Positions 3,176 to 24,545 of a stretch of DNA of 24,668 bases are shown here, in pieces. The DNA comes from Prasinococcaceae sp. CCMP 1430. Lineage: Eukaryota > Plantae > Prasinodermophyta. The notes under the pieces are model-generated. The model was not told the origin of the DNA and ran no database searches. It was given only the letters and a program-made list of their open reading frames with translations. Numbering within the stretch: position 1 is the stretch's first letter; each line of letters begins with the position of its first letter. The position numbers and the translations under genes are program-made. The stretch covers positions 30,474 through 55,141 of the forward strand of contig RQSC01001236.1 in the NCBI GenBank assembly GCA_013416795.1, written 5' to 3'.

Positions 3176-4383
3176 ATGGCGNCCCCCGCGCTGCCGAGGA
3201 GCTCGCCGCGTTCGGCACGCCCGAGTTCGCGGCGCTCGCGGCGGGCGCGGGCGTCTGCGTGGCGTTCGGCGGGCTCATGTCGGGGCTGTCGCTGGGGCTG
3301 CTGTCGCAGGACGCCACCGACCTCGAGGTGATTGCGCGCTCGGGGAGCGCAGAGCAGCGGGCGGACGCCGCGCGTGTCGCCGCGGTGACGCGGTCGCAGC
3401 ACTGGCTGCTGGTGACGTTGCTGTTGTGCAATGCCGTCGCCATGGAGGGCCTGCCGCTCCTGCTGGACCGGTTGGCGAGCCCGGCGCAGGCCGTGGCCAT
3501 CTCGGTGACGCTGGTCCTGCTCGTGGGCGAGGTGCTGCCGCAGGCGGTGTGCTCGCGCTACGGCCTGGCCGTGGGCGCGGCCGCCTCGCCGCTGGTCGCC
3601 GCGCTCATGCGGCTCACCGCGCCCGTGTCGTGGCCGCTCGCCAAGGCGCTCGACGCGGCGCTCGGCACGGGGCACGTCACTCGCTACCGCCGCTCAGAGC
3701 TCAAGGCGCTCGCGGGCATCGAGGGCGAGCGCGGGGGGATCACCGCCGACGAGACGCTCATCGTGGAGGGCGCGCTGGAGCTGGTGGGGAAGTGCGCGGG
3801 CGACGTGATGACGCCGCTCGCCGAGGCGACCCTGCTGGCGGACGACGCGCGCATGGACGAGGAGACGATGACGCGGCTGCTTCGGGAAGGGCACTCGCGC
3901 GTGCCGGTGGTGCGCGCCCCCACCGCACCCGGCGCCGGCGGCGCGCCGCTGGTGGGCGCGGGCGACGCGCGGCTCGCGGCGGGCGATCTGCTCGGCGTGC
4001 TCCTCGTGAAGCAGTGCCTCATGCTGCGGCCCGAGGACGCCGCCGCCGTCTCGGCGCTGCCCATGCGCCAGCTGCCTACCGTGGCGCAGGGCGAATCGCT
4101 CTTCCCGCTGATCGACCTCTTCCAGCGAGGGCGCTCGCACATCGCGGCGGTCGTCGACGACGCGGGCGGCGTGGTCGGCCTCGTGACGCTGGAGGACACG
4201 CTCGAGGAGCTGCTGGGCGAGGAGATCGCCGACGAGACCGACGCCGAGGCGGCCGAGAGCGCCGGCTACGTCGACCGGCAGCTGGCCGCCGCGCGGAGGG
4301 CGCGCGCGCCATGCGCCACAGGGCGCGGCCGCGCTTCGTCATGGGCGACGCGTCCAACGTGCGCGACACGCCCGACGGAATAG
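3176..4383 (+). CDS. CNNM/DUF21 + CBS-pair metal (Mg2+) transporter-like protein, intronless
   Basis: FGGLMSGLSLGLLS, HWLLVTLLLCNAVAMEGLP, LLVGEVLPQAVCSRYGL, DVMTPL, GHSRVPV, GRSHIAAVVD, GLVTLEDTLEELLGEEIADETD. ATG at 3176 is one base out of frame across the N at 3182, so the exact start is uncertain. Confidence 0.93.
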
Positions 4384-4511: not shown

Positions 4512-6987
4512 TCACGCGGCCTGCGCGGCGGCGCCCTGCTGCGGCGGGCGCATGGGCGCGTACGCGCCCATGCAGTGCGCCTGCCATCCGCCGTTGAATC
4601 GCACGCTGCCCGCCTCGTAGTCGTACACCCAACCGTTGTGCTTCGCGTTCGCCTCGCGCGGCTGTGGCTCGCCCGCGGCGGAGGAGGGACAAGGCGCGAA
4701 CACCAGCTGCGCGTCGTTGAGCATCCGCTTGTCGAACTCGCCGTTGTCCGCCAGCGCGATGCACGCCCGGCTGCCGGCGGCCGCCCCCATCCCCGACGGC
4801 ACGGACGCTGATATGGTGCCCTCGTACGCACGCAGCACGACGTCGTCCAAGGCCTGCGGCGAGTCGCACGGCACGAGGCGCATCAGCCGGTCCGATCCAA
4901 CGCCGGCACACAGCGGCGGCGTCGACGAGTCGGGCGCGAGCGTGCTGCGCAGCGTGAGCCGCCCGCCGCTCAGCGTCCACGCGAGCACGCCCGCCGCATG
5001 AAGCAGGTCGTTGCCGCAGGGCTGCGCCGAGAGCGGCGTGCCCGCCGCGGGCGGTGCGGCGCCGCCAGCGGACAGCGCGCCCGCAGAGGGGTCCAGCACG
5101 CCGCGGACGGCGAAGTCCTTGAAGCCCGCGCGCAGGTAGTCGGTTGTGCCGATGGCGCAGAAGCCGTGCGTGGCGATGGCGTTCATGCCAGACTGGGCGG
5201 TGAGGACCTGTGCGCACGTGACGTCAGCACGCGCATGCAGAGTGCAGCCCACCACCGTGCGCGCGCGTGCATGGATTCGTGCTGGCGTGCGTGCATTCGG
5301 CAACCGATCGGCACGCCCGTGTGCGTGCTCGTACGCGTGAACACGCCTAAGCGTGTGAATGTGTGCTATGCGCAGGCGCCCGGTGTGCACAAACAATCTC
5401 AAAAATCGCACACGCGCACGTACCTTGCGCACGCTCGTCCGGCCGGAGAGGTACGCGCTGGCCGTGTCGCCGCTCACCACCAGCGTGAGGCGCACGTCGT
5501 GCGCGTGCTGCGGCGAAAGCGAGGGCACCACACCGCTGGCGACGGTGGCGCTCCGGTCGTGCACGGACTGCAGCGAGGGCTCGAGGCGCCAGTCGCCGCC
5601 CGCCTCGAGCACGAAGTAGATTCCCACGGGGCGCACGCCGTTAAAGGTGCCGCGGCCGTCCACGCGCGCCGCCACGAAGGCCCCGCCGCCGCGGGTGACC
5701 TCGCCGCCCAGCGATACCGTCGCACTCACGCTGACGTCCTGCCACATGGCATCGCCAACCAGACTGAACGGCACGAGGTCCCCAGACCACGTCACCGGAC
5801 GCTCAGGCACGACCTGAACGAGCGCAGTACGGTTGCCCTTAGGGAAATTGGACGCTCCGGGAATGGGATCCCCACCAGCGGAGTCCTCTGCTGGAGCCGA
5901 ATGCCAGTCGTGGCGGACCTCGAAGGTCCCGGCCTGGTCGGCGAAGTATTGCGTCTGGTCGCCGAAGATGCGCCCGACGCCTTCGTCGTTTTCCGGATCG
6001 GCGTCGTCCGAGGCGAAGGCGACGCTCGTGTACGGGAGGGGAAACGGCTTCGCCTCGGGCCGCGTCTCCGGCAGGTCTATGCGCCCCTGTGCGCCCTCGA
6101 AAGAGTCGAGCGGCGCGACGGTGTACACGCAATCCGTTTCGATCTCGAGGAGGATCTCACCCTCGCAGACAGCGACGTCCGGGAGCCGCTCGAACATGTC
6201 CCGCTCGCCGCCGCCGCGTTTCGAGCTCGCGGGGTAATCGAAGCCGAGGCAGGAGCGCCACACGCCCAACGTGGGCTCCGCGCAGCCGTCGCTAGCATCA
6301 GTCGCATGTTCATCCGAGTCCTCGCGGCGGGGCGCACCGCCGACGCCGCGCATGTTGAGACTGTCTGCGTCAAAGACAAACTTGAAGGTGGCAACCTCCG
6401 GTGCGGTGTCGTACCACCCGAGTGACGGGCGCACGCACGACGAGTGGTACGCGCTCATCTTTTCGATGACCATGGCCCAGTTCGCGGCGACGCCGTCACC
6501 GCTCTCAGGCTCGCGCATCGTCACGTACGAGCCGCCATGTGTGAGCTTGCCACTCCCTTGGCCCACGGGCAAATAGATCCAACCGGGGCGCGTGAACTGC
6601 GTCGTGTGCGCCGCCATCCAGATGGGCGACCTCAGGTTATAGCTCCCCGTCCACGGCTGAGCAGCGTCCATCAGACCGCTAGAGAAGAAGGGGAAGCCGG
6701 AGTAGTAGGAACCGATCAGGTTCCATACGATGGTGCAAGTCATGCCCGCGTCCACGAAATTGCGGTTGATGGCGCGCGCCAGACAGCCGCCGCCCTCGAG
6801 ATCTGCGAACGTCGAGTCGTCCTCGGAGGCCCAGAGCGGCACGCCCGCGGCGCGCGCCGCGGTGGGGGAAGTCGCGCCTGGGTAGTGCACCCCAATAGCC
6901 CCCAGGCTCCCCCTGAGCTCGGCGTCCGCACCGACGGCACCGACGAGCTTGTTGGCCGTGGCACCCCACGAGCCGTCGCTGCCGATG
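4512..6987 (-). CDS. GALC: Glycoside hydrolase family 59 (galactocerebrosidase-like) with a C-terminal Cys/Trp ricin-B-like extension; complement(join(4512..5207,5424..<6987)); 5' part lost at N 6988
   Basis: Colinear with GALC as I recall it: IGVHYPG, LWASED (nucleophile Glu), WNLIGSYY, QPWTGSY, AHTTQFTRPGW, GGSYVT, FADQAGTFE, VGDAMW. In-frame intron 5208..5423 (GTACGT..CAG). Confidence 0.88.
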
Positions 6988-7158
6988 NCGCCCGCCGCAA
7001 CGCCGGTGGCGGCAGCGGTGCGAAAGGCAGCACCCGCTGCGGGGGCTCGGGCGGCCGCGGCCGCGGCTGCTGCGGTGCCGAGAAAGAGCGCGGCGCCCGC
7101 CGACGGGGTGTGTGTGGGTACTGTAGGTATTAGGTTTGGGTAGACCAGGCGCTCGCGC

Positions 7159-7768
7159 TCACTCGACGGGCGCGATCTCCCCGAGGTAGATGGCCTTGTC
7201 GGCGCCGGCGCTGGCGATGACGGGCTCGGCGGGGTGGAATGAGACCTCGGCGACGGCACCCTGGTGGCCGGGCAGCTTGTACAGCAGCTCGCGCGCACCG
7301 TAGTCCCACACGTGGACGTGGCGGTCGCCCGAGCCGCACGCCACGCGCGCGCCGTCGGCCGACCACGCGCAGCGCAGCAGGTCCTGCTCGAAGGTGTGCT
7401 TGTGGCCCGTGAGCACCCTGTCCGCGCGCGCGCCGCCCGCGGCGAAGGGCCGCACGTCCCACGAGCGCAGCGTGCCGTCCATGCCATTGGACAGCAGCGT
7501 GTGCCCGTCGGGGGACAGCGCGAGCCCCGTCACCGTGCCGCCGTGGCCCACCAGCGTCTCGACGGGGCCCTCGTCCGTCCGCCGCAGGTCCCACATGCCC
7601 ACGTCATTATCAATCCCGCCCGTGTACACGCCGTCGCCGCCGTCGGCGAAGGCCACCGACGTCATCGAGTAGCCCCCGGTCAGCGTCATCGCCGACGCGC
7701 GCACGCGCAGGTCCCACACGCGGCACGTCCTGTCGTCGGACGCCGTCGCCACCAGCGGCGGCCCTCGC
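7159..7768 (-). CDS. SNRNP40: U5 snRNP 40 kDa WD40 protein, C-terminal exon only (last ~4 WD repeats)
   Basis: RRGPPLVATASDD, VYTGGIDND, LSNGMD, HTFEQDLLRCAWS, LYKLPGHQGAV..V.FHP, DKAIYLGEI. Exon starts after CGCAG acceptor at 7769; no upstream WD exon was found. Confidence 0.85.
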
Positions 7769-13551: not shown

Positions 13552-13616
13552 GTGCGCGCGCGCACGCGCGCGTGCGCGCATGTATGCGTCTCTATGTGCG
13601 CGCGCGTGTGTGCGCN

Positions 13617-13761
13617 CTCAGCCAGACGACTTGTACCAGCAGATGCTCAGCCAGACGACTTGTACCAGCAGATGCTCAGCCAGACGACTTGTACCAGCAG
13701 ATGCTCAGCCAGACGACTTGTACCAGCAGATGCTCAGCCAGACGACTTGTACCAGCAGATG
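13617..13761. repeat. Perfect 29-bp tandem repeat x5 (CTCAGCCAGACGACTTGTACCAGCAGATG), flush with an N
   Basis: Five identical units starting at 13617, 13646, 13675, 13704 and 13733; no spacers. Confidence 0.95.
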
Positions 13762-14220
13762 CGGGGCGCGAAGTGCTCGCCGGCATGGACGCCCGGGACG
13801 GCTTCCGGGGTTGCCCAGTACGCGAGGAGGACCGGCGCCTGGCCGATGCGGTTGCGCGCCTGCTCGATCCGAGCGCAAAGGTGACCATCGCACGACACGC
13901 GCTTGTTCATCGACAACGCGGACGACTTCAAATCCGCATTCAACGCTATGGCCCGCGGCATCAAGCTGCTCAAGCACGCCATCAAGCCTCCGTGCGGCCA
14001 AGGCACGCGCTGAATATGTTATTAACAACAACCTCCAAAGCGAGACGCCCATCAACGACCCCGACAAGGAGGACGAGCTCGTCCCTAAGGCTGCACCGCG
14101 AAAGTCCAAGTTTCGAGGTGTGCACTACAAGTTGAAGCGCGACACAATGCGCACGACAATGACACCGTCCAGCATACAAATATGCCGCGGCGCGCACCAC
14201 GAGGAGCCTTCCGCGATCCA
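13762..14220 (+). pseudogene. Degenerate, frameshifted coding-like segment, possibly a mobile-element remnant with an AP2-like start motif
   Basis: Protein-like stretches in shifting frames (LFIDNADDFKSAFNAMARGIKLLKHAIK; EYVINNNLQSETPINDPDKEDELVPKAAPRKSKFRGVHY). Lower GC than host genes. Confidence 0.3.
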
Positions 14221-14391
14221 CGGGATGCCTTCCGTCGTTTTCGAAAGCCGCTCAGGTTCGATCGCTCCTTCCTTTTCGCGGAACTGCGCGCGCGAATCGC
14301 GCCCGAAATCACGCGGTCGCCGCGCGCGCGCGCGCGACCTGGTTCCTCGCCCGACGACCCCGGTGGTCCAATCGAATGACCATGTAGGCAC

Positions 14392-14418
14392 CCGGGTTGT
14401 GCCCCAGCCACAACCCGG
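14392..14418. other. Perfect 10-bp stem, 7-nt loop hairpin
   Basis: CCGGGTTGTG (14392-14401) / CACAACCCGG (14409-14418). Confidence 0.8.
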
Positions 14419-14563
14419 CGACCCTGGTGTGGCAAATATAAACCCTATATCGTCTTCCAACGCGCACTGTACCTTAATTAAACCCCTAACCCGCACGGCG
14501 CACGCACGCGGCCGCTCCAAAGGGGATTCGAAGTTCGAACGCGTCGGGCGCGCGCGTGGCGCT

Positions 14564-14567
14564 GGGG

Positions 14568-14602
<35 letters not shown>

Positions 14603-14621
14603 GGGGGGAGGAGGGGGGGGG
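14564..14621. repeat. Poly-G tract upstream of the 14701 gene
   Basis: About 58 nt, almost entirely G. Confidence 0.9.
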
Positions 14622-14700
14622 CTGCGCGTGGCGCCACGGGCTCCAGGAGGCGTCACACACCGCACGGGTCGGGTGGGGCGGCCGCGCGCCGGCGGGCGGC

Positions 14701-15505
14701 ATGGAGGGCCAGGTGGAGTACGCCGAGCGGCGGAGGCGGCTCAAGCGCGTGCGCGATGCCCTCGACAAGGCAGCCGCGCGCGCCGACAAGCTGCGCGCGG
14801 CGAGGGAGGAGCTCGTCAAGGCGGTGGAGGACGCGGCGTCGTTCGAGGTGCGCGCGCCGCGCCGCCGTGCGCACGCGAATGCGGGTGCTCGCCCGCGCCT
14901 GCTCGCGCCTGCTCACGCCCCTCTCGCGCCGACCCGACCCAACACAGCTCGAGGCCGGCCGACGCCCAGGCGACGGCGCCGCGCTCGACGCGGTCGGGCT
15001 CGCGCTGCGCCAGGGCAACGCGGCGGTGGGCGGGATGGTCAGGACGTGGCAGGCGAGCGTGGACGCCTCCAAGGTGCGCGAGCGAGGGCGCCCGAGCGCG
15101 CGTGGCGGCGAGCGCGCGACTCCATCGGCGCTGACGACCCCGTCTCCCCCCTCTGCCGTTCCCTGCCTCGTCATCCCCCCGCCCCCTCCCTCCCTTCGCC
15201 CGCTGTTGTGTGGCAAAGGAGGCCTTCCCGACGACGCTGCCCAAGGACTCGCGCCCCGACGACGCGGGGTCCTTCCTGGCGCTGCTGTCGCCGGCAATCA
15301 AGGTGCGCGAGATGGATCGAGCGAGCTGGGTGCGAGCCACCCTCAGCATCGCGCGCTCGCCGACGCGCTCGCTGACCCGCGCGCTCTTCAGGCGGAGCTC
15401 GCCGCGCACGCGCAGGCGACCGCCGACATGCAGACCGCGCACCGCGCGCTGCACGCCGACGGCGCGCCCGGCACATCGCGGCCCGCGAGGAGGAGCTCGC
15501 GCTGA
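14701..15505 (+). CDS. Hypothetical coiled-coil protein, ~156 aa; join(14701..14847,14948..15073,15219..15302,15392..15505)
   Basis: Three phase-0 GTGCGC..AG introns join helical exons (MEGQVEYAERRRRLKRVRDALDKAAARADKL...). No family recognised, and the last exon may carry a frameshift. Confidence 0.65.
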
Positions 15506-15565
15506 GGACGGGCGTGCGGCTCGTCGAGGCCGTACTGTACACTCTGCTACTGTACACCACCGCCA

Positions 15566-15952
15566 TCAGTGCTCGCGCTCGAGCTTGGCGCGCTGCGGCG
15601 GCGCCTCCTCCTCCTCCTGCCGCTGCGCCGAGTCGGCCGCGTCGCGGCCGCCCGCTCGCCGCTTGGGCGACGGCGCCGCGCTGAAGAAGCCGCGGATGTC
15701 GGCGCCCGCGCGCGTGGGCTTGGGCGGCGTGTACGGCGCGCAGGCCTCGCTCGGGGGAATGGCATTTGGAGGGATTGTTGATCGCCGGGCTGACCGTGTG
15801 GGAGGTGAGGCCCTCCGCAGTGCCGCGCGTCCGGCGGGCGAACACGTCGGGCCGGTCGCCGCGCCGCAGCCACTCCCTGGCGGCCGCCTCGCCGCGCAGG
15901 ACGACGGGCTGCCGGTCGTGCAGCCACGCGAGCCCCTCGGCGGGCGCCGTCG
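15566..15952 (-). pseudogene. SRAP/HMCES abasic-site processing protein, C-terminal fragment, with a frameshift near 15750
   Basis: TAPAEGLAWLHDRQPVVL..EWL..HTVSPAINN (SRAP HDRxP motif), continuing in another frame as ACAPY..DIRGFFSAAPSPKR to TGA 15566. Upstream coding sequence is replaced by unrelated DNA beyond ~15953. Confidence 0.8.
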
Positions 15953-16099
15953 CGCGACAGGTACTGTCCTGGACACGTGAGAATTTTTTTGGACGGCGAT
16001 AAATTTTTCCGATCGAAAAATGCGGGGGCACAAAACAGTTAGGGTCGCTCGGCGAAAATAAGGGTTTATAAATGACTCGTCGTAGCTGTCGGGGTGGGC

Positions 16100-16238
16100 G
16101 CCGCCACATTTGGCGCTTGAAACCCACCTTCCTCACAACCTCGATGAGCTCGTCGCGGGTCTTCTTGCCCAAGTCCTTGAGCGCAGGGGCCTTGAGGCGC
16201 ACGTGGTATGGGGCCTTGTCCATCACGACGACGGCCAT
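16100..16238 (-). mobile_element. Possible IS630/Tc1-mariner (DDE_3) transposase remnant
   Basis: VVVMDKAPYH resembles the xIVMDNAxYH second-Asp motif, followed by a K/R-rich helix (KKTRDELIEVVRK). No other catalytic residues or TIRs seen. Confidence 0.35.
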
Positions 16239-16444
16239 TGCGCCGATGGCGGTGGTACGCCGCGTACTACAGCGCTTCGAGTTCGCGACAAGTCGCACTT
16301 GGCCCGCCTGTGGGCATGCGCGTCCAGGGCGAAGAGGTGAGCATGCGTGTGTATGTGCGGGCCGTGATGTGACGCGATGGCGAGCCTGATGTGACAGTTG
16401 CGTATCTATACTGACTTTTTGATGCGATCGTCGCACCGCACCTC

Positions 16445-16551
16445 GATCCGTTGGTTTAGTTATTTGAAAGGGCTCTGGCCCTTTTTAACTAGAAGGTTAT
16501 AACGTCCGCCTAACAAGCGGAAGGCCGGCAGTTCGACTCTGCCATGGATTA
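16445..16551 (+). tRNA. trnV-AAC: tRNA-Val(AAC) with a 33-nt intron (16462..16494) in the D-loop at position 17/18
   Basis: Acceptor GATCCGT/ATGGATT, D-arm GTTT-AGTT|GGTTA-TAAC after splicing, anticodon arm TCCGC-CTAACAA-GCGGA, variable AGGCC, T-arm GGCAG-TTCGACT-CTGCC, discriminator A73. The intron ends form a BHB motif. Confidence 0.9.
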
Positions 16552-16579
16552 GCAGTTCAAAAGCCGTGTGCGGGCTTCC

Positions 16580-16588
16580 TTTTTTTTT
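16580..16588 (+). terminator. RNA polymerase III terminator (T9)
   Basis: Nine Ts starting 29 nt after the tRNA 3' end. Confidence 0.75.
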
Positions 16589-16685
16589 GTTGCCCTTGTT
16601 GCATCTTTGTTTTTGCCCGTAACGCTTGCCGCCGCGCATGGGCGCCCCCTCCCCCCCCCACCACCACCCCCTCCGCCCTCCCCCA

Positions 16686-16892
16686 CCTGGTGCAAGAAAA
16701 TAAAACCCAGCACACCCTAATCCGCCGACCTGGTCCCCTAATCCGTCGGCCCTGCAGCGTCCATCGACCCCGGTACCCGCATCCGTCGACCCTGGTGCGG
16801 AAAAAAATTAAAACCCAGCACACCCTAATCCGTCGGCCCTGGTGCCCTAATCCGTCGGCCTTGGTGCGTCCGCCGACCCTGGTGCGCTAATC
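16686..16892. repeat. Degenerate ~22-bp minisatellite (CCCTAATCCGTCGGCCCTGGTG) with higher-order duplication
   Basis: About 7 variant units. TAAAACCCAGCACACCCTAATCCG is repeated exactly at 16701-16724 and 16809-16832. Confidence 0.85.
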
Positions 16893-17137
16893 AGTGGGTA
16901 AATGACTGTCAGAAGTAACCACGGGAGAGCAGATACATAAATGGCTGGACATCAAACGTGACCACGGGAGACTAGATGAGGACAACACTATGTGGCATTA
17001 TCCGATGTAATCCACGTATCATCACACACCACCCTCGACCGAACCTCTAGACTAGTCTGTTCGTAAACATTCGGGGGTTACGTCCGAACTTACCACGAAG
17101 TGAAGATGTAATGAAGATGCAATCCATCTATCATCAT

Positions 17138-17275
17138 AAGCCGCGGCGCCTGAGGCCCGGCGGCGACGACGGGAGTGTCGCATACGTCGCCGCGGTCGTG
17201 GACAATAAGGTGCAGGAGACAACGGGGGCTTGCGACGAGACGCCCGAGCCCACGTTCACTATCCTCACGACGCCG
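17138..17275 (+). pseudogene. SRAP/HMCES internal fragment, inverted relative to the C-terminal fragment
   Basis: KPRRLRPGGDDGSVAYVAAVVD...PTFTILTT is the segment that precedes xxxLxWLHDR in SRAP proteins. It ends where the - strand fragment begins. Confidence 0.65.
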
Positions 17276-17341
17276 TTTTTTTCCTTCGGGCGTGTGCCGA
17301 AAACTTGACGATTAGGTACCGTCTCAGCTTGACGGCCGGAA
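17276..17341. repeat. Exact mirror (reversed, not complemented) copy of 16521..16586 (tRNA 3' half, trailer and T-run)
   Basis: Read right to left, the + strand gives AAGGCCGGCAGTTCGACTCTGCCATGGATTAGCAGTTCAAAAGCCGTGTGCGGGCTTCCTTTTTTT, identical to 16521-16586. Confidence 0.97.
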
Positions 17342-17527
17342 CCGCTTGTTAGGCGGACGTTATAACCTTCTAGTTAAAAAGGGCCAGAGCCCTTTCAAAT
17401 AACTAAACCAACGGATCGAGGTGCGGTGCGACGATCGCATCAAAAAGTCAGTATAGATACGCAACTGTCACATCAGGCTCGCCATCGCGTCACATCACGG
17501 CCCGCACATACACACGCATGCTCACCT
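17342..17527 (-). repeat. Exact 186-bp inverted repeat of 16335..16520, carrying the tRNA-Val upstream region and 5' half (through position 42, intron included)
   Basis: Base-by-base reverse-complement identity over 186 nt; arms are 821 nt apart. Confidence 0.97.
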
Positions 17528-17583
17528 GAAGCGGGACCTGCGCGTACGGGTGTCCGCCCGGTTCACGCTGAACAGCGCTTGAG
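17528..17583. repeat. Exact mirror (reversed, not complemented) copy of 16279..16334
   Basis: GAAGCGGGACCTGCGCGTACGGGTGTCCGCCCGGTTCACGCTGAACAGCGCTTGAG equals 16334 to 16279 read backwards. Confidence 0.97.
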
Positions 17584-17628
17584 ACGTGGCGCCGACTGCA
17601 AATCTGAAATCCCCGCCGCGCGTGCGTT

Positions 17629-19371
17629 TTGACCTGCCTGCGCTCCGCGTGCGTGCGCGCGCGCGCACGCCACGCGCCCACTGAGGTAACCGGCCCAGCG
17701 GCGTGCGCGCCCTTCCCCCGACCCTTTCCCCGTCCTCCGCTCCTCCCCCCCCCTCCCCACACACCCCTGTGCCCCTCCCCCTCTGCCGCGCCCCTCGCGC
17801 CCGCCGCCGCCGCCGTCGCCCCGACCGCTAGCGGGCGGCGGCGCGCGGCATCCGCGCGCTCCGCCCCGCGCGCGGCGGCCACCGATCCCGCCGATCCCGC
17901 CGATCCCGCCGATCCCGCGGAGTCCTCGAGCAACACCAACACAGCAGCCTTCCAATGGCGCGGCTTCAAGCCCCTCCCCGCCCTCGCCTCCGTTTCAATC
18001 GGCCTCGTCCTCTACCTTCTCATCCCGTGCCCCGCCCAGCTCACCCAGCAGGCGTGGGCCCTGCTGGCCATCTTCCTCACCACGGTCACCGGCCTCATCC
18101 TCGAGCCGCTGCCCGTCCCGGCGTGGGCCGTGCTCTCCCTCACCACCGCGCTGATGACCAAGACGCTCTCGTGGGACGCGGCGATGGGCGCCTTCACCAA
18201 CGACGTCATCTGGCTGATCACCGTGAGCTTCTTCTTCGCGCGCGGCATCGTGCAGTCGGGCCTGGGCGCGCGCATCGCGCAGGCGTTCGTGGCGCTCTTC
18301 GGGCGCTCCACCCTCGGCCTGTCGTACGGCCTGGCGGCCGCCGAAACCGTATTAGCACTTGCGATGCCCTCGGGCACCGCGCGCGCCGGCGGCGTCTTCA
18401 TGCCGGTGATCGACTCGCTCTCCAAAGAATCGGGCTCCACGCCTCACTCCAACCCCCGGCGTATGGGCGCCTTCCTGGCCATGTCGCAGGCGCACGGCGC
18501 GTCGGCGCACTCCTCGTCCATCTTCCTGACGGGCGCCGCGCAGAACCTGCTCGTCATCAAGCTCGCCGAGCAGGCCGGCGTGGTGTTCGCCAACGCGTGG
18601 ATGCAGTGGTTCGCGGCGGGCGTCCTGCCGTGCCTGGCGTGCCTGGCGCTCAGCCCGTACGCCGTGTACCGGCTGTGCGAGCCCGAGCTCAAGGACACCC
18701 CGGAGGCGCCCGCGCGGGCGCGCGCGAGCCTCGCGGCGATGGGGCCGCTCACGCAGGACGAGGCGATCATGGTGGCGGCCATGGGCGCCGCGGTGGTCAT
18801 CTGGGTGGGCGGCTTCGGCCTGCCGGGCGCCGTGGGCGCCCTGCTGGGGCTCAGCGTCCTGCTGGCGACGGGCGTGCTCTCGTGGGCGGACTGCATCGAC
18901 GAGGAGCCCGGGTGGTCGACGCTCACGTGGTTCTCCATCCTGGTGGGCTACTCCACGGCGCTCAACGAGCTGGGCGTCATCGGCTGGGTCGCAAGCAGCT
19001 GCAGCGGCCTCGTGGCGAGCCTCGGCCTGCCCACCGCCGGCGCGGTGGCGCTCATCCTCGCCGCCTACGCGCTCATCCACTACATGTTCGCCAGCCAGAC
19101 GGCGCACGTCGCCTCGCTCTTCGGCGCCTTCCTGAGCATGATGGTGCTCGCGGGCGGCGCCGGCCTGCCGGCCGCGCTCGCGCTGGGCTTCCTGACCAAC
19201 CTCTTCGGCGGCATCACGCACTACGCCGCGGGCCAGAGCGTGGTCTTCTACAACGCCGGCTACGTGAGCCTCGCGGAGTTCTGGACCATCGGCCTCAAGA
19301 TGTTCCTGCTGAACTCGGCCGTCTTCGCGGCCGTCGCCATCCCGTGGTGGAAGTTCCTGGGCATCATGTGA
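17629..19371 (+). CDS. DiT2: Plastid dicarboxylate (glutamate/malate) translocator, DiT2 type, DASS family; true start codon not found (17629 is only the ORF-track start)
   Basis: LAIFLTT..LEPLPVPAWA, AFTNDVIWLI..SFFFARG, STLGLSYGL, AMPSGTARAGG, FLTGAAQNLL..KLAE, KDTPEAP, HYMFASQTAHV, HYAAGQS, WWKFLG. Preceded by an Ala/Arg/Ser transit-like segment and a (DPA)4 repeat. Confidence 0.94.
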   Translation: MTCLRSACVRARARHAPTEVTGPAACAPFPRPFPRPPLLPPPPHTPLCPSPSAAPLAPAAAAVAPTASGRRRAASARSAPRAAATDPADPADPADPAESSSNTNTAAFQWRGFKPLPALASVSIGLVLYLLIPCPAQLTQQAWALLAIFLTTVTGLILEPLPVPAWAVLSLTTALMTKTLSWDAAMGAFTNDVIWLITVSFFFARGIVQSGLGARIAQAFVALFGRSTLGLSYGLAAAETVLALAMPSGTARAGGVFMPVIDSLSKESGSTPHSNPRRMGAFLAMSQAHGASAHSSSIFLTGAAQNLLVIKLAEQAGVVFANAWMQWFAAGVLPCLACLALSPYAVYRLCEPELKDTPEAPARARASLAAMGPLTQDEAIMVAAMGAAVVIWVGGFGLPGAVGALLGLSVLLATGVLSWADCIDEEPGWSTLTWFSILVGYSTALNELGVIGWVASSCSGLVASLGLPTAGAVALILAAYALIHYMFASQTAHVASLFGAFLSMMVLAGGAGLPAALALGFLTNLFGGITHYAAGQSVVFYNAGYVSLAEFWTIGLKMFLLNSAVFAAVAIPWWKFLGIM

Positions 19372-22051: not shown

Positions 22052-23555
22052 ATGGCGGACGCGGAGGGCGGCGCGACCGCAGGAGCGCCGCCGGCCGCCN
22101 NNNNNNNNNNNNNNNNNNNNNNNNNNNNNNNNNNNNNNNNNNNNNNNNNNNNNNNNNNNNNNNNNNNNNNNNNNNNNNNNNNNNNNNNNNNNNNNNNNNN
22201 NNNNNNNNNNNNNNNNNNNNNNNNNNNNNNNNNGGCGGCGACCGTCGTGCTGCACGTGTGCCGCGCGCTCCGCGAGCGCCGACAAGCGGCCCCAGCGACG
22301 CCGGCGAGCCTCGTGGCCGAGGCGCGCGCGGCGGGCGTCGACGACGCGAGGCGCTCGGCGCTGACGGCGCACGCCAGCGAGCGAGAGGGCGACGCTCCGC
22401 GCCGGCCGGCCTTGCTCCTCCTGCACGACGTCGGCGAGTCGATGGAGTCCGTGCTGGGCGCCGCCGAGCGCGCCGCCGAGCGCGGGTACGTCGCCGCCGC
22501 CATGGAGCTGCGCAACCACGGCGCACGCGCGGCGATGCGGCCGCACGCCTACCGCGAGGCGCTCTGCGCCGCCTATCGCGACTACGACGCCCGTGCAGTC
22601 GAGCCGGCGCCTCCCGCGTACGCGCTGGACTCGCTCTGGGACGCCTCGCGCGTGCTCGACTACCTGTGCGCGCGGCCGGACGTCGACGCCGCGCGCGTGG
22701 GCGTGCTGGGGTTCGGGCTGGGCGGCGCGGTGGCGTACATGCTCGCCGCGCTGGACGCGCGCGTGGCGTGCTGCGTGCCCGTGTGCGGCGTGCGCGCGTA
22801 CAAGCGGGCGCTCAGCTCGGGCGAGTGGCGCAACGAGGCCGACGAGATGCCGCACGTGTTCGCGCTCGCGGCGAAGCTCAGGGAGGGGCGTCACGCGGAG
22901 GGCGCCGGCGGAGGACCAGGTGAGAGCGCAGCCGGAGCGGTGGCGGCGCGCCCGCTTGCGCGCGCGCGCGCCCGCGGCGCAGTGTCTGACCCCCCGCGCG
23001 CAAGCAGCGTCCAACAAGTCGGCCGCCGTGGCGGCGTCCTCGGGCGGCCGCCTTGGTCCGACCCTCGCGGGAGTCACTGCAGGCGACGCCAAGGAAGTGT
23101 GGCAGCGCGTGGCGCCGGGGCTGCTGGAGCACTTCGACGCCCCCGAGTGCCTGCATGCGATCGCGCCGCGGCCGCTGCTGGTGATCGCCGGCCAGCGCGA
23201 CGGCGTGTGCCCCGTCGGCGGCGTCCAGGAGGCGTACGCCACTGCGATGCGCGCGTGGGCGGTCCTGGGCGCGGCGCCGCACGTGCGCTTGCAGGTCTTC
23301 GAGGGCGTGGGGCACAGGCCCAACGAGGCGATGCGGCGCGCAGCCAATGCGTGGCTCGACAAGTTCCTGCTGCACGGCGGCAGGGAGCAGAAGGCCCTCC
23401 CCGACATCATCTATGCCGGCGGCCCGCCGCCGCAGCCGGAGGGTGCCGAGGCCGAGCAGGCGAGCCAGCGGCGGACGGGGACGGAGGAGGCGGCGCCCGG
23501 AACGACATGCTCGGCGCGCCCCCCCGTTCGCCGGGGCAGGAGCGCAATCGCGTAG
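22052..23555 (+). CDS. Alpha/beta-hydrolase fold protein (dienelactone hydrolase/esterase-like) lacking the nucleophile Ser; join(22052..22919,23008..23555), spanning an N gap
   Basis: RGYVAAAMELRNHG, VLDYL..RPDVDAARVGVLGFGLGG, AIAPRPLLVIAGQRD, FEGVGH. Intron GTGAGA(22920)..AAGCAG(23007) is a NAGNAG acceptor. Confidence 0.87.
22100..22233. other. Assembly gap (134 N)
   Basis: Run of N. Confidence 1.

Positions 23556-24507: not shown

Positions 24508-24545
<38 letters not shown>
24504..24545. repeat. (GT)n microsatellite in the proteasome beta-3 intron
   Basis: About 21 GT units with one interruption. Confidence 0.9.

What the first reader, a model, noticed from the sequence alone, without database searches (positions are those of the whole stretch)
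16279..17583. 308-nt duplication that is reverse-complement in the middle but MIRROR (reverse, uncomplemented) at both flanks
Seen: every position i in 16279-16586 maps to 33862-i with no indel. The 186-nt core (16335-16520) is reverse-complemented, while the 56-nt (16279-16334) and 66-nt (16521-16586) flanks are reversed without complementation, all at 100% identity. The second copy's - strand therefore reads complement(A)-B-complement(C): the tRNA continues past position 42 as the parallel complement of its own T-arm and acceptor. Known: Watson-Crick templated synthesis, including 3'-5' Thg1-type polymerases, yields only antiparallel complements, so mixed-sequence mirror copies have no known mechanism. 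The most likely cause is an in-silico error, such as gap-fill extensions of a reverse-oriented repeat contig being reversed but not complemented, or a deliberate edit. If reads support it, it would imply parallel-strand or non-Watson-Crick copying, which would be unprecedented.
Basis: partly seen in the sequence, partly recalled or inferred. Interest (0 to 1): 0.85.

Follow-up and report, generated by a model that had tools for sequence, protein, structure and literature searches.

The report
Assembly error inside a tRNA inverted repeat
The "mirror" duplication is really written in this draft sequence, but independent read-derived contigs show a normal, perfect 307-bp inverted repeat carrying two tRNA-Val genes, so the two uncomplemented flanks are a software error and not new biology.

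Summary
16335-16520 is the reverse complement of 17342-17527 (186 nt, 100%). 16279-16334 and 16521-16586 are the plain reverse of 17528-17583 and 17276-17341, co-linear and without indels.

It is not in the DNA. Logan contigs of four public runs were laid on the region.
- In three runs of the same organism, one unbranched 307-nt unitig covers 16280-16586 at about twice the neighbouring depth.
- In all four runs, the contig that ends at 17275 continues into the reverse complement of 16586 and below.
- No contig lies on 17276-17341 or 17528-17582 as written.

The true locus is therefore a perfect 307-bp inverted repeat, 16280-16586 and 17276-17582. It holds two convergent tRNA-Val(AAC) genes, each with a 34-nt intervening sequence in the D-loop. 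In the window, the outer 66 and 55 nt of arm 2 are the plain complement of the true sequence.

The outer ends of both patches fall exactly on de Bruijn-graph branch points. The window is a fragmentary draft whose single Ns hide missing sequence. Together these point to a contig-joining or gap-closing bug (reversed, not complemented).

First readers noted similar complement-only patches on other pieces of this genome; I did not test those notes.

Not a real feature; low interest.

The parts
16280..16586 (+). Arm 1 of the true 307-bp inverted repeat. It is correct as written.
   Evidence: one 307-nt unitig covers it with 0 mismatches in X1, X4 and X17, at 1.8-2.5 times the depth of the flanking unique unitigs. 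X20 covers 16280-16456 and 16503-16586 with 0 mismatches.
16445..16551 (+). tRNA-Val(AAC) gene, copy 1, with a 34-nt intervening sequence at 16460-16493 in the D-loop. A run of nine T follows at 16580-16588.
   Evidence: ARAGORN and Rfam do not call it unspliced. After 16460-16493 is removed, ARAGORN draws a canonical 73-nt tRNA-Val(aac) cloverleaf. The T-run is read directly from the sequence.
16587..17275 (.). 689-bp spacer between the arms. It is lower in G+C and contains copies of a roughly 21-nt motif (TAATCCGTCGGCCCTGGTGC-like) and a 108-109-nt duplication.
   Evidence: families D1-D3 and D5; contigs cover it, and word depth over 16640-16895 is raised 4-6 fold, so it is a dispersed repeat family. 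G+C is 0.57 against about 0.70 elsewhere.
17276..17341 (.). Patch 1 (66 nt). As written it is the plain complement of the true sequence, which equals the reverse of 16521-16586. This is the artefact.
   Evidence: exact mirror; depth is 0 in all four runs, and the joint 17275 to 16586 on opposite strands appears in all four.
17342..17527 (-). Core of arm 2 (186 nt), the correct reverse complement of 16335-16520.
   Evidence: I1: 186 nt, 100% complementary. Its zero depth is an assignment effect: the 307-nt unitig was laid once, on arm 1, and its doubled depth stands for the second copy.
17528..17582 (.). Patch 2 (55 nt). As written it is the plain complement of the true sequence, which equals the reverse of 16280-16334. 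This is the artefact.
   Evidence: no contig lies on it. Contigs that begin at 17583 carry exactly 30 (k-1) further letters that do not fit the window. The 307-nt unitig does not branch at 16334/16335.
17311..17417 (-). tRNA-Val(AAC) gene, copy 2, convergent with copy 1. In the window its last 31 nt (17311-17341) are corrupted by patch 1.
   Evidence: Coordinates follow from i -> 33862-i. One search shows the minus strand of copy 2 identical to copy 1 through ...CCTAACAAGCGG and complemented after that.

Best explanation
The mirror flanks are an error of the deposited draft sequence, not of the organism. The real locus is an ordinary perfect inverted repeat of 307 bp (16280-16586 and 17276-17582) around a 689-bp spacer. 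Each arm carries a tRNA-Val(AAC) gene with a D-loop intervening sequence, and the two genes point toward each other. When arm 2 was written into the scaffold, its outer 66 nt and 55 nt were entered as the plain complement of the true sequence. Reversing a minus-strand piece without complementing it produces exactly this. Because arm 2 is inverted, complement(reverse complement) equals reverse, and this gives the 'mirror' look. Shown: the pattern in the window; the true junction on the left side; the two-copy, unbranched nature of the whole 307-nt unit; the absence of the patch sequences from four runs. Inferred: the step that went wrong was contig-end extension or gap closing at a repeat boundary of a short-read assembly. 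The program responsible is unknown.
For: laid Logan contigs of X1, X4 and X17 (organism A, three studies) and X20 (another sample, 2019).
- (a) A 307-nt unitig equals 16280-16586 with 0 mismatches. Its depth against its neighbours is 293 vs 166, 208 vs 109-117, and 33 vs 13.5-17. It has no branch at 16334/5 or 16520/1, so both copies share the whole unit.
- (b) The joint '16586 / 17275, opposite strands' appears in all four runs. In X20 one contig covers 17122-17275 and then 84 nt of the reverse complement of 16503-16586.
- (c) Depth is 0 over 17280-17343, and the depth in bin 17536-17599 is fully accounted for by the contig starting at 17583.
- (d) Contigs starting at 17583 have exactly 30 unlaid letters to their left.

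none of the 19 runs of organism A holds more than 0.88 of the sampled 31-mers. 31-mers touching the patches account for about 7.6% of the shortfall.

The window is a fragmentary draft. It has six single Ns and a 134-N gap. The single N at 6988 hides at least 908 nt that are present in an independent TARA scaffold.

The outer ends of the patches (17276, 17582) coincide exactly with unitig ends in the independent graphs.

Leads only, not tested here: first-reader notes of complement-only patches of 45-116 nt on other pieces of the same genome.
Against: - The right-hand junction (17582/17583) is supported only indirectly. The tool did not print the 30 unlaid letters, so I did not read them.
- Contigs drop rare variants, so a minority form in the source culture cannot be formally excluded.
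- I could not identify the source run, the assembler or an AGP file, so the specific bug is inferred.
- The layout of wrong outer pieces around a correct 186-nt core does not match any gap-closer behaviour I know.
- I found no paper describing such a bug.
Confidence: 0.93

Rival explanations
1. A deliberate or accidental edit made after assembly (a planted control, or a hand-edited or finished region) complemented two short stretches.
For: The patches are 100% exact complements with sharp edges. Similar patches are reported in several other windows of the same genome (unverified). The read evidence shows only that the sequence is not in the DNA, not when it was altered.
Against: Both patches end exactly at the repeat/unique boundaries (17276 and 17582), which are branch points of independent de Bruijn graphs. 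Randomly placed edits would hit both boundaries to the base with a probability of roughly one in a million. The coincidence points to a graph-aware step, meaning assembly, scaffolding or gap closing.
Confidence: 0.05
2. A colour-space (SOLiD-type) decoding error. A sequence and its complement have the same colour string, so a piece decoded from a wrong anchor base can come out as the plain complement.
For: Established property of two-base encoding (my own knowledge). It would give complement-only stretches of unchanged length, as seen.
Against: Wrong anchors should also give the two other base swaps (A/C+G/T and A/G+C/T) about as often. Both patches here are pure complements, as are all those noted elsewhere, although readers could only recognise that kind. 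Nothing indicates that colour-space data were used. The patch edges sit on graph branch points, which this idea does not explain by itself.
Confidence: 0.02
3. The mirror flanks are real DNA in the sequenced isolate, made by some parallel-strand or non-Watson-Crick copying, or by an unknown rearrangement.
For: Only that the sequence as written is internally exact.
Against:: four runs from four studies show the normal reverse complement on the left junction, an unbranched two-copy 307-nt unit, and no contig on either flank; no run of 19 holds the full word set. No templated mechanism yields a mixed-sequence parallel complement (established knowledge). In the written form the second tRNA gene is destroyed.
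Confidence: 0.005

Closest known systems
Strand-handling errors in draft assemblies (a minus-strand piece reversed without complementing during contig joining or gap closing)
   Same: Exact, indel-free, read-length-sized stretches (55 and 66 nt) are the plain complement of what the reads show. They lie at repeat boundaries of a fragmentary, N-containing draft.
   Different: I found no published description of this specific error and could not name the program. The correct 186-nt core between two wrong ends is an unusual layout.
Inverted pairs of identical nuclear tRNA genes (recent duplication or gene conversion)
   Same: The true structure has two identical convergent tRNA-Val(AAC) genes, each with about 165 nt of upstream and 35 nt of downstream sequence, in a perfect 307-bp inverted repeat.
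   Different: Nothing unusual beyond the D-loop intervening sequence. That is a separate finding of this scan (s1-381933).
Natural mirror repeats (homopurine-homopyrimidine, H-DNA-forming)
   Same: The sequence reads the same in reverse on one strand.
   Different: Natural mirror repeats are homopurine/homopyrimidine tracts, like the (GA)n tract at 2586-2654 of this window. The flanks here are mixed sequence, lie 700-1300 nt apart and are absent from the reads.

Membership tests
In-silico assembly artefact | The written sequence is absent from independent read-derived data, while an alternative at the same place is present. | tested here: met
   depth is 0 on 17276-17341 and 17528-17582 in four runs. 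The joint 17275 to reverse complement of 16586 is present in all four. The 307-nt unitig is unbranched at about twice the depth.
In-silico assembly artefact | The error is located at a structure that assemblers handle badly (repeat boundary, contig end or gap). | tested here: met
   Patch outer ends 17276 and 17582 equal unitig ends in the independent graphs. The window has six single-N joins and a 134-N gap. The N at 6988 hides at least 908 nt.
In-silico assembly artefact | Traceable to a named program or step (AGP, gap-fill log). | not testable with these tools
   The source record, assembler and AGP are not available here. The literature search was unproductive.
True inverted repeat | Both arms are reverse complements over their whole length in the DNA. 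| tested here: met
   unbranched 307-nt unitig at about twice the depth. The left junction was read directly. The right junction is inferred from the 30 unlaid letters at 17583 and from the lack of a branch at 16334/5.
tRNA gene (tRNA-Val, anticodon AAC) | Cloverleaf with acceptor, D, anticodon and T arms. | tested here: met
   ARAGORN gives a 73-nt tRNA-Val(aac) once 16460-16493 is removed. Unspliced, neither ARAGORN nor Rfam calls it.
tRNA gene with bulge-helix-bulge intron | Both splice sites lie in 3-nt bulges around a 4-bp helix. | not tested
   Claimed by note s1-381933. I showed only that removing 34 nt restores the cloverleaf, and many neighbouring deletions also pass ARAGORN.
Natural mirror repeat (H-DNA type) | Homopurine-homopyrimidine composition. 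| tested here: not met
   The flank sequences are mixed purine/pyrimidine.
Product of parallel-strand / non-Watson-Crick copying | The parallel complement is present in genomic DNA. | tested here: not met
   absent from all four runs; no run holds more than 0.88 of the words.

The most novel reading that the evidence does not exclude
The most novel reading not strictly excluded is that the isolate or library behind this assembly really carries the written form as a minority or strain-specific allele. Its parallel-complement flanks would need an unknown copying mechanism. A more modest reading is that the assembly carries a genome-wide, systematic complement-without-reversal error that silently corrupts genes, tRNAs included, in a public record.
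Probability: 0.005. Interest if true: 0.95.

Novelty: not a real feature. Interest (0 to 1): 0.08.

Why it matters
As biology it does not matter: the locus is an ordinary inverted pair of tRNA-Val genes. As data quality it has some practical weight.
- The written sequence destroys one of two identical tRNA genes.
- If the other first-reader notes hold, the same error sits in protein-coding genes of this assembly (pyruvate kinase, an RCC1 copy, an FG-GAP gene), where it creates false stops and false 'strange' features.
- Every 'mirror' or 'complement-not-reverse-complement' finding from this genome should be treated as this artefact until reads say otherwise.
- The single Ns of this assembly should be read as joins that may hide kilobases.

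Tried and rejected
- **JGI metagenome contigs.** Two scans looked for an independent copy of arm 2: both flanks with a 300-315-nt gap, then the left flank alone. Both found nothing.
- **Independent contig next to arm 2 through the adjacent DiT2-like transporter gene.** No near-identical protein is on record. The best are two unnamed ENA proteins at 71-73%, and named relatives are about 52%.
- **Complement-only patches elsewhere in the window.**
  - tblastn of a 100%-identical ENA protein (P0001) and of a 55% relative against the complement-only version of the window gave no hit.
  - blastn of the TARA scaffold L001 against the same version also gave none.
  - L001 matches window 6987-4276 at 99.3% with no patch.
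- **Sequence flanking each single N.** I looked for direct, inverted, mirror or complement relations and found nothing.
- **Literature.** A search for a described 'reversed but not complemented' assembly bug returned only unrelated uses of the phrase.
- **Naming the organism.** G+C of about 70%, marine samples and only distant named relatives suggested a Prasinoderma-like alga. The published P. coloniale assembly is PacBio-based with 22 chromosomes (PMC7455551), which does not fit an N-ridden draft, so I leave the organism unnamed.
- **Colour-space decoding as the cause.** Kept only as a minor rival.
- **Transposon reading of the true 1303-bp unit.** I saw no target-site duplication at 16270-16279 / 17583-17592 by eye. 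I did not pursue it.

Full report
**1. The observation.** I mapped every position i of 16219-16646 to 33862-i and classed each pair as reverse-complement, mirror (same base) or neither.
- 16279-16334: 56 of 56 mirror.
- 16335-16520: 186 of 186 reverse-complement.
- 16521-16586: 66 of 66 mirror.
- Outside these limits the relation is random.

A k-mer scan of the whole window under four relations (direct, reverse complement, mirror, complement) returned the same three blocks. All other mirror or complement matches of 20 nt or more were low-complexity: (GA)n at 2586-2654, a G-run at 14564-14608, (TG)n at 24513-24545, and (CG)n. The repeat finder reports the 186-nt arms as 100% complementary with 821 nt between them.

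**2. The setting.**
- The window has about 70% G+C, falling to 57% over 16-17 kb.
- It is a draft: single Ns at 3182, 6988, 9048, 11804, 13616 and 21529, and a 134-N gap at 22100-22233.
- The repeat lies in a gap of about 1.2 kb between two divergent reading frames with Pfam matches. One frame on the minus strand (15171-16436) has the C-terminal part of an SRAP domain. The other, on the plus strand (17629-19371), is a sodium:sulfate symporter-family protein. Its nearest named relatives are plant and algal chloroplast dicarboxylate transporters DiT2, at about 52%.
- ARAGORN and Rfam call no tRNA in the window.
- After 16460-16493 (34 nt, in the D-loop) is removed, ARAGORN draws a canonical 73-nt tRNA-Val(AAC) from 16445 to 16551. 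This agrees with another first-reader note (s1-381933).
- The right edge of the 186-nt core falls inside this gene, just after the anticodon stem. Copy 1 continues with a proper variable loop, T-arm and acceptor. The minus strand of copy 2 continues with their parallel complement.

Copy 1 is therefore the sound copy on that side and copy 2 the odd one.

**3. What the reads say.** Nineteen public runs of one organism hold 0.83-0.88 of the sampled 31-mers of 15800-18200, and none holds more. Words touching the two flanks of copy 2 make up about 7.6% of the stretch. I laid Logan's contigs on 16000-17900. The runs were three of these, from three studies (X1, X4, X17), and a fourth run from another sample (X20). 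Four results matter.

- (a) **One unbranched unit.** In X1, X4 and X17 a single 307-nt unitig covers 16280-16586 without a mismatch. Its depth against the unique unitigs beside it is 293 vs 166, 208 vs 109-117, and 33 vs 13.5-17, or 1.8 to 2.5 fold. A compacted de Bruijn graph breaks a unitig wherever two copies diverge. An unbranched unit at double depth means both copies share all 307 nt, including the parts the window shows as mirror.
- (b) **The left junction.** All four runs show the joint '16586 / 17275, opposite strands'. The 500-nt unitig that covers 16806-17275 goes on for 30 letters into the reverse complement of 16557-16586. In X20 one contig covers 17122-17275 and then 84 letters of the reverse complement of 16503-16586.
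- (c) **Nothing on the flanks.** Depth is zero in bin 17280-17343 in all runs. The depth in bin 17536-17599 is exactly what the contig starting at 17583 contributes.
- (d) **The right junction.** The contigs that start at 17583 each carry exactly 30 (k-1) further letters that do not fit the window.

The zero depth over the correct core of copy 2 is an assignment effect. The 307-nt unitig was laid once, on copy 1.

**4. The true structure.** It is a perfect inverted repeat of 307 bp, 16280-16586 and 17276-17582, around a 689-bp spacer.
- Base 17583 is unique sequence that equals 16279 by chance, so the second patch is 55 nt, not 56.
- Each arm carries a tRNA-Val(AAC) gene with about 165 nt of upstream sequence and a T-run downstream. 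The genes are convergent: 16445-16551 on the plus strand and 17311-17417 on the minus strand.
- The spacer holds copies of a roughly 21-nt motif and a 108-109-nt duplication. It shows 4-6 fold raised word depth, which indicates a dispersed repeat family.
- A perfect inverted pair of tRNA genes is ordinary. It reflects recent duplication or gene conversion.

**5. How the artefact arose (inferred).** As written, 17276-17341 and 17528-17582 are the plain complement of the true sequence. A piece that lies on the minus strand and is reversed without being complemented gives exactly that. Because arm 2 is itself inverted, the result looks like a mirror of arm 1. Two facts tie the error to assembly rather than to a random edit.

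First, the outer ends of both patches (17276 and 17582) are, to the base, the ends of unitigs in independently built graphs. These are the repeat/unique boundaries where short-read contigs stop and where scaffolders and gap closers write sequence.

Second, the record is a fragmentary draft whose joins are unreliable.
- An independent TARA Oceans metagenome scaffold (L001) is 99.3% identical to window 6987-4276.
- At the single N at 6988 the window jumps to unrelated sequence.
- At least 908 nt, including the first 268 codons of the GH59 gene, are missing.

I could not identify the program, and a literature search for such a bug was unproductive. The layout of a correct 186-nt core between two wrong ends matches no gap-closer behaviour I know.

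Other first-reader notes on this genome describe complement-only patches of 45, 55, 55, 56, 70 and 116 nt in other pieces. I did not test them. The recurrence of 55 nt may reflect a k-mer or overlap setting. The scan has therefore seen this before on other DNA of the same genome. Those notes are leads, not support.

**6. Rivals.**
- **A post-assembly edit or planted control.** The reads alone cannot exclude this, but it would have to hit two graph branch points exactly (0.05).
- **Colour-space decoding.** It can produce plain complements, but should produce two other base swaps as often, and nothing indicates such data were used (0.02).
- **Real DNA made by parallel-strand copying.** This is refuted for the four runs examined. 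It would need raw reads of the source isolate carrying the junction words (0.005).

**7. Limits.**
- Contigs show presence, not absence, and drop rare variants.
- The right junction is inferred from graph logic, not read letter by letter.
- I do not know which run, if any, is the source of the assembly.
- Two scans of JGI metagenome contigs for arm-2 flanks found nothing.
- No near-identical copy of the neighbouring transporter is on record, so I hold no independent contig sequence across arm 2.

**8. Verdict.** This is not a real feature. Its only value is as a warning about this assembly.

Noticed in passing
window 6988 (single N); L001:1-908: The single N is not one ambiguous base but a join of non-adjacent sequence. 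An independent TARA scaffold is 99.3% identical to 6987-4276. It continues upstream with 908 nt, including the first 268 codons of the GH59 (galactocerebrosidase-like) gene, that occur nowhere in the window. The other single Ns (3182, 9048, 11804, 13616, 21529) may hide sequence in the same way.
   Followed up: partly
window 4276; L001:3623-4239: The window and the TARA scaffold also part company at 4276 with no N in the window. The last 617 nt of L001 (with a 248-residue gene on the other strand) have no counterpart in the window. This could be strain rearrangement, a chimeric metagenome scaffold or a silent misjoin in the window.
   Followed up: partly
window 16445-16551 (and the true copy at 17311-17417, minus strand): tRNA-Val(AAC) with a 34-nt intervening sequence (16460-16493) in the D-loop instead of the canonical 37/38 position. 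The insert has a 7-bp hairpin (AAAGGGC/GCCCTTT). The cloverleaf is restored once it is removed. The bulge-helix-bulge geometry was not checked.
   Followed up: partly
window 16640-16895: Copies of a roughly 21-nt motif (TAATCCGTCGGCCCTGGTGC-like) and a 108-109-nt duplication lie in the spacer. Word depth is 4-6 fold above single copy in three runs, so this is a dispersed repeat family of this genome.
   Followed up: no
window 13617-13762: Five exact tandem copies of a 29-nt unit start directly after the single N at 13616, inside a long open frame (13580-15505) that has no Pfam match.
   Followed up: no
window 17629-19371 (+): Intron-free open frame for a chloroplast dicarboxylate transporter (DiT2-like; Na_sulph_symp, E = 8e-104). 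The nearest named relatives are only about 52% identical (land plants, Chlorokybus, Trebouxia). Two unnamed marine ENA proteins reach 71-73%, which suggests a lineage with few sequenced relatives.
   Followed up: partly
window 4512-7487 (-): A GH59 galactocerebrosidase-like gene in a G+C-rich marine alga. Apart from two unnamed ENA proteins (100% and 55% identity), the best hits are a slime mould (Physarum-type transcripts), molluscs and fishes at 32-37%.
   Followed up: no
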